Below are positions 7,901 to 10,900 of a DNA stretch of 64,000 nucleotides, piece by piece. The position numbers and the translations under genes were made by a program. Every line of letters starts with the position of its first letter. Positions within the stretch are counted from its first letter, which is position 1. Source of the DNA: Fimbriosthenelais zetlandica. Taxonomy: Eukaryota. Under the pieces are notes generated by a model. The model was given only the letters and a program-made list of their open reading frames with translations. It did no database searches and had not been told where the DNA came from. The stretch is from the NCBI GenBank assembly GCA_977030845.1, contig OZ365109.1:17980001-18044000 (forward strand). Reading direction: 5' to 3'.

Positions 7901-10900
7901 ACTGATCAACGCCGACCAGCCCGCAGATGTTTCCGCATGGGACATCCTCGATTGGCTCAACATAACGACCCATCATGAGAATAGTTCTGTAAGGACAATG
8001 GACCGCTCAGTAAGTAATTTGAAATCTTTGGGAGGTAATGGTCATATGTTCATGAACTCTTCACAAATTTTGAATTTGAAGACAGAGATAACCAGTCCTT
8101 GGTCATATGATTCCATACTAACCAGAAATTGGTCATTCAGAATAATTTCTTTTACAAAAAGGTTCATAGTGAATATTTTTACTTCAGAAATATACTAATT
8201 TGACATTCTCCAGGACTTGAAAACGGAAATGAATTCCAGGACTTTTCCAAAATCGAACCCGGTTAACACTCACCTCTGGATGCTCTTCTGGAAGAGATCC
8301 TCTTTCTTGCCGGGAGCGTAGTTAGGTCCCATGATGCGGCATTTAAGACCGGTGGACACGACTCCGGAGAAGACGCGGCCGAAAGCGTAGAAACGTCCCT
8401 TATCGGTGGTGGGGACCATCTTGGAGATGTACATCATGAGGGGACCGTTGGGGTCGCAGGTCTTGATGGCTACAGCAGCAGCATCATCGTGTGGGCCTTC
8501 GTACAGGAGCTCCATACGGTATTTCTGGGCAGTGACGGGTGAGGGAAGATGAATGGTGATCATTTGAAGCAAGGCGTCCCCAGCTGGCAGCCATTTGCGC
8601 ATGATTGTCTTCAGCAGAGGCTTTCCTTCTAGCTCTTTCTCCTCTACGGTAAGTTTCACATGGAGTTTCTCAATGAGGGCGAGGGTCTTGTCCTTGGTCT
8701 CATTCATGCAGTACTTGAAGACGGTGTAGATGGGGTTCAGGATGTACTGGGTGAAGCCACGTTGGTAGCCTTTGGAGGTGAACATTGACAGGTCCTTGGA
8801 CCATTTCCCTCCTTTAGGATCGTAGAACTCATCGCCCCAAAGACGACGCATGAGTTTACTCTCTTCGATCTTGAACTTGCTGTGGTAGATCTCAGCGAAC
8901 TGTTTCAGTGTGAACGCCCAACCGTGAAGACCGGACCCGAAGCCTACAGTTCCAGAAGCAGGGCTGACCTGTAAGAAAAAACCGGTAAATTGTCAAATAC
9001 ATGACTCAAGTACTTGATATCTCACGTTTGGAATTTTATAGAAAAAGCAATATATATTGTATATAATTTTGTAATACTGTATTCTGTCTCAATTAACAAA
9101 TAAACTCTCCTCGGAAATCCATGAGGTAAAAATGCAATTAGTTTTTACATCAATGGTATTTCAATCTAACCAGTCTTGATACTCACACTGATATCTCCCA
9201 TTGGGCCAGTCTCATCTCCATAGGTAGCAATGATAACGTTGACGTTCTCAACAATACGCTGGAAGGTCTGGTAGAGATCTTCAGCCTCGAGTTGCAGAGT
9301 AAGCAGGGCCAAGTCCATTTTGTTCATGAACAGGACAGGCTTGATACGTTCACCGATGGCCTGGCGGAGCACGGTCTCAGTTTGTACGCACACACCTACA
9401 ATGATCAAATATGTTTATAATTAATACTGCTGGGTACATTAATGCCTTAAACAAGCGGATAAATACAATAAAGACAAATATCACAATCCCTACCTAAATC
9501 AAAAGCTCAGAAAATATTTTGGATATAAAGATTAAGTAGATTGTTTAGGATTAATCAGGGATGTCTAGTAAGTCGAGTACTACCATGTAATCTACTTAAG
9601 AGATTAATTTCAAAAGGGGTTTCTATTTTTGTATGGTGGCGGGAAGGAAGGATTGTCTACATTTAAGACATACCAGGCAAAGCCACCCAGGCTTTTAATA
9701 TTGCACCGAAAAACATGCCAACATCACCAGAGAAGAAGACATGGATAGAAAGTGCTTCAAGAAACAAGATGTATACGTCTAGAATTTCCATTTAATTTCT
9801 ATTTCATCTAAGTTTCACTTCCAAAGGCCCGCAGGGTTACGAGGCCTTTTCCACAACAAAATTTAAATAGCATTTATTCCCGTCCGGTGTCAGTTCGATC
9901 ACATTGGTGGTAAAGGTGGTTAAGGTAGGGAGGAGCAGGGAATGGGGATTGTGAGTTAGGAATTAAAAGGAAGATAGCGGAAGAATTTCAGAGGCAGGTG
10001 GAGAATTAGAATACTTGATATTGTCAGTGTCAGACTGAGTTTCCAGTAACTAAGGTCTACTGGAAAAGCGGATTTGTGATTTTCCAGGACACTATCGGTA
10101 GGAACTCTGCTGGCCTGTTAAAAAAATAGATGTTGCGACTACTCGTACAAACCTGAGACACAGTCGACGACGACGAGAGCACCATCAGTTACACGGAGGG
10201 CGGCTGTGACCTCGGATGAGAAGTCAACGTGGCCGGGGGAGTCAATCAAGTTGATTAAGAAACCGTTGGAGTTGTCCTCACGCTCCTGCTTGATGTAAGA
10301 CAAATCTTTGTCGGGCAACTCGTAGTACAGGGAGATACCACTGGAAGAGAAATACAAATTGTCCAGTTACACAGGATGGGATACAAAATATTTCTATATA
10401 ATATAGGCAGGATAGGCCGTTACAATGAACTATTTTTGTATGGTGGCGGGAAGGAAGGATTGTCTACATTTAAGACATACCAGGCAAAGCCACCCATGTT
10501 CTTAATATTGCACCGAAAAACATGCCAACATCACCAGAGAAGAAGACATGGATAGAAAGTGCTTCAAAAAACGACCACGTGGAACAAACCTGCAGAATTT
10601 CCCCTTCTAATTTCCAAATCTATGGTAGGCAGGCATTATTAGTTAGAAAGCAAAATTGACAGATCCTTGCTGGACTTATGCCTATATTAATTGAGAATTA
10701 TTTTCTCATACCGTACTTCAAATGTTCATAACTTCATTGAAATTTAGACATGAAATGTCCGAGAATGAAGCACCTGTCCAAAATACTAAGGCCCTTATAA
10801 AAAAAAAATTAAAAAATAGGAGTATGTCGATTCAGCAAATGAGCATGTGTCCACCCTATCCCTAGGCCTACTGATCTTCGCCTTAATTTTAACATTTTGA

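What the first reader, a model, noticed from the sequence alone, without database searches (positions are those of the whole stretch)
9627..10565. Duplicated box H/ACA snoRNA in consecutive eEF2 introns
Seen: two 132-nt copies (9627-9758 and 10434-10565), sense to the host, identical except for 3 substitutions, all in the single-stranded hinge after the H box; flanks are not alignable. Both fold as hairpin-AUAUUA-hairpin-ACA-NNN. Established: translation-factor genes host intronic snoRNAs (as I recall, human EEF2 hosts the C/D snoRNA SNORD37, not an H/ACA). Inference: a functional, lineage-specific host/snoRNA pairing kept by selection or gene conversion.
Basis: partly seen in the sequence, partly recalled or inferred. 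Interest (0 to 1): 0.7.

Follow-up and report, generated by a model that had tools for sequence, protein, structure and literature searches.

The report
Twin H/ACA snoRNA in eEF2 introns
Two neighbouring introns of the elongation factor 2 gene of this invertebrate each carry a near-identical copy of an unannotated small nucleolar RNA of the pseudouridine-guide (box H/ACA) type, an ordinary kind of gene whose probable target is a 28S rRNA uridine.

Summary
A 143-nt unit occurs twice (9623-9765 and 10430-10572, minus strand). It is sense to eEF2 and lies in introns 3 and 2. The copies differ at 4 positions, and the flanks do not align. These are the only two copies in the 447-Mb genome, so it is not a dispersed repeat.

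Each copy folds as hairpin, AUAUUA, hairpin, ACA. Both hairpins fold better than shuffles (z -3.6 and -2.75). All four differences avoid stems, pockets and boxes (P = 0.015).

No Rfam family matches. No homologue was found in six other eEF2 loci.

The 3' hairpin pocket (UUUGCC / CUUCCC) pairs by 12 Watson-Crick bp around 28S U2246 (GGGAAG-UC-GGCAAA), 14 nt from ACA. Pocket shuffles give p about 0.01. The 5' hairpin has no convincing target.

One other species (L019) carries a different three-copy H/ACA snoRNA in its eEF2 introns. The orthologue of that snoRNA in this genome sits in RPL3 introns, so host pairings shift between lineages.

No RNA data could be obtained.

Verdict: very probably a genuine H/ACA snoRNA, a new member of a known kind, of modest interest. 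Other snoRNA notes exist for this genome, none on this element.

The parts
9623..9765 (-). Copy A of the 143-nt repeat unit, in eEF2 intron 3. The predicted mature snoRNA spans about 9627-9758.
10430..10572 (-). Copy B of the 143-nt repeat unit, in eEF2 intron 2. The predicted mature snoRNA spans about 10434-10565.
9703..9755 (-). Copy A, 5' hairpin (lower stem GCACU/GGUGC, pocket UUCUAUC/UUUUUC). No convincing target was found.
   Evidence: (z -3.58)
9696..9701 (-). Copy A, H box AUAUUA (fits ANANNA)
9635..9687 (-). Copy A, 3' hairpin (lower stem GGUGGC/GCCACC). Its pocket strands hold the guide elements UUUGCC (9676-9681) and CUUCCC (9641-9646).
   Evidence: (z -2.75)
9630..9632 (-). Copy A, ACA box, 2 nt after the 3' stem
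10510..10562 (-). Copy B, 5' hairpin (identical to copy A)
10503..10508 (-). Copy B, H box AUAUUA
10442..10494 (-). Copy B, 3' hairpin, with guide elements at 10483-10488 and 10448-10453
10437..10439 (-). Copy B, ACA box
10153..10340 (-). eEF2 exon 3 (GISLYYEL...VVVDCVS), lying between the two snoRNA-bearing introns
10918..11132 (-). eEF2 exon 2 (VNFTVDEIR...ITIKST)
9187..9395 (-). eEF2 exon 4 ([11 protein letters not shown]...). The 3' end is approximate.

Best explanation
The two units are paralogous genes for one box H/ACA small nucleolar RNA of about 130 nt. Each would be released from a spliced eEF2 intron (introns 2 and 3) and trimmed to the snoRNP-protected core. This biogenesis is inferred from what is established for intronic snoRNAs. 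The 3' hairpin most likely guides pseudouridylation of 28S rRNA U2246 (own numbering; context AAGGGAAG-U-CGGCAAAUU). Its pocket strands CUUCCC and UUUGCC pair with the six bases on either side of the unpaired UC, 14 nt upstream of ACA. I put roughly even odds on this particular target. The 5' hairpin has the right shape but no convincing rRNA or U2 target, so it may be structural only or aimed at an RNA that was not examined. The near-identity of the two copies, with all differences outside functional elements, reflects purifying selection, gene conversion, or both.
For: There are exactly two copies in the genome, found both by BLAST and by a covariance model. Both lie in sense orientation in consecutive eEF2 introns.

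Each hairpin folds better than shuffles: z -3.58 (0 of 200 shuffles as good) and z -2.75 (1 of 200). The antisense strand does not.

A simple H/ACA scanner finds exactly these two loci in eEF2 introns 1-3. It finds only about 11 other loci in 128 kb of single strand. The chance that a given 143-nt segment holds such an architecture is therefore about 0.0015.

All 4 differences fall outside stems, pockets and boxes (P = 0.015).

The guide match is 12 Watson-Crick bp to 28S U2246 at 14 nt from ACA. Pocket-only shuffles reach 12 bp in 1% of trials, and whole-hairpin shuffles in 3.5%.

The same scan works on positive controls. The H/ACA snoRNA in L019 and its orthologue in RPL3 of this genome pair by 14 Watson-Crick bp with 28S U3422, at 16-17 nt from the H box.
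Against: No RNA evidence exists. No run of this species was listed, and the runs that were laid covered only exons of unrelated organisms.

No homologue was found in six other eEF2 loci. There is therefore no covariation support, and the two copies are too alike to give any.

No Rfam family matches.

In the minimum-energy fold, the guide helices for U2246 do not abut the upper stem: 1 and 3 guide bases are left unpaired.

The first, structure-naive target scans were at chance level. The U2246 match was found only after the register was relaxed.

The 5' pocket lies 12 nt from the H box, short of the canonical 14-16 nt.
Confidence: 0.75

Rival explanations
1. This is a recent copy without constraint. 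A 143-nt H/ACA-like unit was copied into the neighbouring intron recently, or is homogenised by gene conversion. One or both copies would then be silent or decaying, and the similarity would reflect youth rather than function.
For: Divergence is only about 3%. No orthologue was found elsewhere. There are no expression data. The unit boundaries match the mature RNA, as expected if an RNA-sized piece moved.
Against: The four differences avoid all functional elements (P = 0.015). Both copies keep intact boxes, stems and the guide. No poly(A) tail or target-site duplication is visible at the borders. Multi-copy functional snoRNAs in consecutive introns are the norm in this genome, as in RPL3 and in the earlier notes listed.
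Confidence: 0.12
2. This is not a snoRNA. It would be a duplicated structured intronic element of another kind, such as a fragment of a mobile element or a cis-acting splicing or regulatory structure of eEF2 pre-mRNA.
For: No family match was found. A simple H/ACA motif scanner has a real background rate.
Against: There are only two copies in 447 Mb, both in one gene and one orientation. No inverted repeats were found. The unit coincides end to end with a complete H/ACA architecture and carries a significant rRNA guide match.
Confidence: 0.05
3. This is an H/ACA RNA with a non-modifying role. The pyrimidine-rich 3' pocket strand would pair with purine-rich 28S sequences as a folding or processing chaperone, in the manner of snR30/U17. 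Possible partners include the two conserved 20-mers that flank the 'hidden break' region.
For: Complementarity exists to 28S around U1797 (8+8 bp, one mismatch per arm) and around U1915. These are the two flanking 20-mers named in PMC6925239.
Against: The U1797 match is reached by 5% of shuffles for that configuration alone, and about ten configurations were tried. It also requires opening the base of the upper stem and lies 19 nt from ACA. The canonical U2246 match is cleaner.
Confidence: 0.03

Closest known systems
Box H/ACA snoRNAs in general. The best, sub-threshold Rfam models were SCARNA23 (RF00427) and ceN102 (RF01608).
   Same: Hairpin-hinge-hairpin-tail architecture, ANANNA and ACA boxes, internal-loop pockets, and location in an intron of a translation-machinery gene.
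   Different: The scores are 16.4 bits against a gathering score of 60, and 14.2 against 50. These show generic architecture only and no sequence-family membership. No UGAG (CAB box) motif was seen on reading the apical loops, so the element is not a scaRNA.
U37/SNORD37 in vertebrate EEF2
   Same: The same host gene, and an intron-encoded rRNA modification guide (chicken U37 in EEF2 intron 6; PMC2653536).
   Different: U37 is a box C/D methylation guide, present as a single copy in a different intron. No SNORD37 match exists in this window.
Three-copy H/ACA snoRNA in the eEF2 introns of another species (L019; ENA ERZ24900295 ctg6257l)
   Same: The host is eEF2. Near-identical copies sit in separate introns (1, 3 and 4), with a conserved core and diverged flanks.
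   Different: The sequence and guide are unrelated. Its 5' hairpin targets 28S U3422 by 14 Watson-Crick bp. Model R1 does not match it.
H/ACA snoRNA pair in RPL3 introns of this same genome (L030, minus strand, 5219-5096 and 3930-3806)
   Same: The same arrangement: duplicated H/ACA snoRNA in consecutive introns of a translation gene.
   Different: It is the orthologue of the L019 snoRNA, not of the eEF2 one, and has a different guide and host.

Membership tests
Box H/ACA snoRNA (class) | Two hairpins, each with an internal loop (pocket), joined by a single-stranded hinge | tested here: met
   The MFE and centroid folds agree. Hairpins folded alone give z -3.58 and -2.75.
Box H/ACA snoRNA (class) | H box ANANNA in the hinge, directly after the 5' hairpin | tested here: met
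   AUAUUA lies 1 nt after the 5' stem and is identical in both copies.
Box H/ACA snoRNA (class) | ACA located 3 nt from the mature 3' end | tested here: inconclusive
   ACA lies 2 nt after the 3' stem. The mature 3' end cannot be seen without RNA data. Identity between the copies runs 7 nt past ACA.
Box H/ACA snoRNA (class) | Pocket strands complementary to rRNA or snRNA on both sides of an unpaired U-N, with the U 14-16 nt upstream of the H or ACA box | tested here: met
   For the 3' hairpin: 6+6 Watson-Crick bp around 28S U2246, 14 nt from ACA, p about 0.01. For the 5' hairpin this is not met: the best match is 8 Watson-Crick bp, the pocket is 12 nt from the H box, and there is no U2 match.
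Box H/ACA snoRNA (class) | A stable RNA of about 130 nt bound by dyskerin/Cbf5, Nop10, Nhp2 and Gar1 | not testable with these tools
   No RNA run of this species was listed. The laid contigs came from other organisms.
Box H/ACA snoRNA (class) | Conservation with compensatory changes in related species | tested here: inconclusive
   No homologue was found in eEF2 loci L008-L014 and L017-L019. The evolutionary distance of these species is unknown.
Any curated Rfam snoRNA family | Score at or above the family's gathering threshold | tested here: not met
   There were no gathering-level hits in the window. The best hits were 16.4 bits against 60 and 14.2 against 50.
SNORD37 (U37), the vertebrate EEF2-hosted snoRNA | C/D boxes with an antisense element to 28S, located in an EEF2 intron | tested here: not met
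   No Rfam hit was found. No 12-nt perfect complement to rRNA occurs anywhere in the gene's sense strand. The single C/D-motif candidate in intron 1 has no rRNA guide.

The most novel reading that the evidence does not exclude
The snoRNA specifies a pseudouridine at a universally conserved 28S position (GGGAAG-psi-CGGCAAA) that, as far as I recall, is not modified in yeast or human. It would then be a lineage-specific rRNA modification carried by a lineage-specific eEF2-hosted guide. Its 5' hairpin would be free for a non-rRNA target.
Probability: 0.35. Interest if true: 0.35.

Novelty: new member of a known kind. Interest (0 to 1): 0.3.

Why it matters
It adds an unannotated H/ACA guide RNA, and a testable predicted pseudouridine in the conserved 28S core, to the snoRNA catalogue of a poorly studied invertebrate.

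It also gives a clean example of how changeable snoRNA-host pairings are. eEF2 hosts one H/ACA snoRNA here and a different one in another species, while the orthologue of that second snoRNA sits here in RPL3.

None of this challenges current understanding. Duplicated snoRNAs in consecutive introns of highly expressed translation genes are the expected pattern.

Tried and rejected
RNA evidence:
- The first search for sequencing runs listed none. The second listed only small-share runs of other organisms.
- Laying four of these runs at 80% likeness covered the exons only, as spliced eEF2 mRNAs of unrelated taxa. It says nothing about the snoRNA.

Relatives:
- A metagenome pattern scan for the H-box-to-ACA signature found nothing.
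- blastn, nhmmer and covariance model R1 found no homologue in six other eEF2 loci.
- Two protein searches with exons gave best hits of only 76-87% identity and no organism names. The taxon could therefore not be named.
- Three contig look-ups returned no DNA.

Targets:
- The first scans, tied strictly to the MFE pocket, gave 28S U1589 for the 5' hairpin and U1915 or 18S U387 for the 3' hairpin. None was better than shuffled guides (27-54% of shuffles did as well), so they were dropped.
- The 16-bp match at 28S U1797 needs a non-canonical geometry and has p = 0.05 before multiple testing.
- There is no U2 snRNA target.

Other readings:
- C/D snoRNA in intron 1: one UGAUGA...CUGA candidate (11840-11747) has no rRNA complement, and no 12-mer complement to rRNA occurs anywhere in the gene. 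The weak snR13 and SNORD112 hits at 11395-11502 are far below threshold.
- Mobile element: rejected on copy number (2) and the absence of inverted repeats.
- Rfam searches by family for rRNA in the own genome failed technically. The rDNA was found by a pattern search instead.

Full report
**Observation.** The region contains one direct-repeat family: 9623-9765 and 10430-10572, 143 nt, 97% identical. In the alignment with 70-nt flanks, identity starts and stops abruptly. A fourth lies in the 5' leader. The flanks are unalignable, apart from a marginal collinear 21-nt match 15-35 nt upstream (22 of 500 shuffles score as well).

**Host gene.** The minus strand encodes eEF2.
- The start ATG is at 12201-12199.
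- Intron 1 spans 12198-11133.
- Exon 2 spans 11132-10918.
- Intron 2 spans 10917-10341 and holds copy B. The 3' end of the copy lies about 95 nt from the acceptor.
- Exon 3 spans 10340-10153.
- Intron 3 spans 10152-9396 and holds copy A, about 230 nt from the acceptor.
- Exon 4 starts at 9395.

Both copies are sense to the host.

**Copy number.** BLAST of the unit against the whole 447-Mb assembly returns only these two places. A covariance model built from the two copies (R1) also returns only them, in the genome and in the window.

**Architecture.** The sense strand folds as a 5' hairpin (lower stem GCACU/GGUGC, pocket UUCUAUC/UUUUUC), then one base, then AUAUUA (fits ANANNA). An 8-nt hinge follows, then a 3' hairpin (lower stem GGUGGC/GCCACC, pocket UUUGCCU/UUCCUUCCC), then AU, then ACA.
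- The whole unit has z -2.05.
- The hairpins folded alone have z -3.58 (0 of 200 shuffles as good) and z -2.75 (1 of 200).
- The antisense strand is no better than shuffles.

I wrote a plain H/ACA scanner that looks for ACA, an ANANNA box 45-85 nt upstream, and two single hairpins of -12 kcal/mol or better that close next to the boxes. It finds exactly the two copies in eEF2 introns 1-3. It finds about 11 other loci in the 128 kb of both strands of the window. A given 143-nt segment on a given strand would therefore enclose such an architecture with a probability of about 0.0015. The scanner is not specific on its own, since it also fires inside exons of other loci. The coincidence of its hit with the repeat boundaries is what carries weight.

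**Substitution pattern.** Of the 143 positions, 54 are in stems, 29 in pocket strands and 9 in boxes. All four differences fall in the remaining 51 (P = 0.015). This fits purifying selection on the functional parts, or gene conversion. It cannot tell the two apart.

**Known families.** No Rfam family reaches its gathering score anywhere in the window. With permissive filters on the unit alone, the best matches are SCARNA23 (16.4 bits against 60) and ceN102 (14.2 against 50). These show shared architecture, not membership. On reading the apical loops I saw no UGAG (CAB) motif.

**Target.** I recovered the rDNA of this genome through a conserved 18S pattern and delimited the genes with Rfam. In L006 they are 18S at 166-2068, 5.8S at 2574-2727 and 28S at 3101-7059.

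Scans that forced the guide helices to abut the MFE upper stem gave only chance-level candidates.

A scan that let the register float found the key match. The 3' pocket strands UUUGCC and CUUCCC form 6+6 Watson-Crick pairs with 28S GGGAAG-[U2246 C]-GGCAAA, and the 3' guide starts 14 nt before ACA. The sequence was confirmed at L006:5346.

Controls:
- Shuffling only the two pocket strands reaches 12 Watson-Crick pairs in 1% of 1000 trials.
- Shuffling the whole hairpin, with all registers allowed, reaches it in 3.5%.
- As a positive control, the same code finds a perfect 9+5 bp match to 28S U3422 for the H/ACA snoRNA of locus L019. The same guide elements (AGCU and CGUUCCCUA) recur in its orthologue in this genome's RPL3 introns. 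By my counting these lie 17 and 16 nt from the H box.

The U2246 pairing leaves one guide base on the 5' strand and three on the 3' strand unpaired under the upper stem, so the geometry is slightly irregular.

The 5' hairpin has no match better than 8 Watson-Crick pairs in rRNA and none in U2. Its pocket is 12 nt from the H box.

From memory only, the U2246 equivalent is not a known pseudouridine in yeast or human. The nearest known sites I recall are the pair a dozen or so bases downstream, in AUCCGUAAC. I could not verify this with the tools.

**Relatives.** Exon-3 look-alikes led to eEF2 loci of six other, unnamed organisms. None holds a homologue by blastn or nhmmer or by model R1. Rfam finds no snoRNA in them.

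One of them, L019, has a different H/ACA snoRNA. It is present in three copies, in eEF2 introns 1, 3 and 4 (2752-2933, 4735-4916, 5885-6066). Here too the core is nearly invariant and the flanks have diverged.

Its guide motif led to its orthologue in the present genome, which lies not in eEF2 but in consecutive RPL3 introns on contig C13. eEF2 is thus a repeated but not a conserved home for H/ACA snoRNAs. It also shows that the arrangement is commonplace in this genome. Earlier notes of this scan point the same way, reporting multi-copy snoRNAs in RACK1 and RPS3 introns. I did not check those notes.

**Expression.** No sequencing run of this species could be listed. The four runs that were laid are spliced eEF2 transcripts of other organisms and cover only exons. 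Expression is therefore untested.

**Conclusion.** This is very probably a genuine box H/ACA snoRNA, present as two isoforms, belonging to no curated family. Its 3' hairpin probably directs pseudouridylation of 28S U2246. It is a new member of a well-known kind. Its interest lies mainly in the predicted modification site and in the evidence for turnover of snoRNA hosts.

Noticed in passing
L019:2752-2933, 4735-4916, 5885-6066 (ENA ERZ24900295 ctg6257l): Another species' eEF2 gene carries three near-identical copies of a different H/ACA snoRNA, in introns 1, 3 and 4. Its 5' hairpin pairs by 14 Watson-Crick bp with the conserved 28S sequence AUAGGGAACG-U-G-AGCUG. No Rfam family matches it.
   Followed up: partly
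L030 (G000:C13:25395500-25404500), minus strand, 5219-5096 and 3930-3806; also 4474-4326: RPL3 introns of this genome hold two copies of the orthologue of the L019 snoRNA (same guide elements AGCU / CGUUCCCUA). A third, different H/ACA-like candidate lies in the intron between them.
   Followed up: partly
L006:7723-7841; L007:7818-7936 and 8849-8967: 5S rRNA genes lie inside the 18S-5.8S-28S rDNA unit, downstream of 28S and on the same strand. One rDNA array has one copy and the other has two. The two arrays have different unit lengths, about 15.2 kb on C34 and about 20.5 kb on C41.
   Followed up: no
window 11747-11840 (minus strand), eEF2 intron 1: A UGAUGA...CUGA pair 94 nt apart looks like a C/D snoRNA. 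It has a poor terminal stem and no complementarity of 10 nt or more to rRNA. It is probably not a guide for rRNA.
   Followed up: yes
window 59329-59497 (-), 29356-29496 (-), 52143-52274 (+), 21040-21197 (+), 4057-4198 (-): These are further hits of the simple H/ACA scanner, with folding energies of -33 to -47 kcal/mol. Most are probably false positives and none was examined.
   Followed up: no
L006:4885-4905 and 5005-5025 (28S U1797 and U1915): The pyrimidine-rich 3' pocket strand of the snoRNA also complements both conserved 20-mers that flank the 28S 'hidden break' region, as named in PMC6925239. By shuffling this is at chance level.
   Followed up: yes
G000:C35:604202-645551 and C34:394-22317: U2 snRNA genes are arranged in tandem arrays with a 4116-bp period. 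There are at least 42 U2 matches genome-wide.
   Followed up: no
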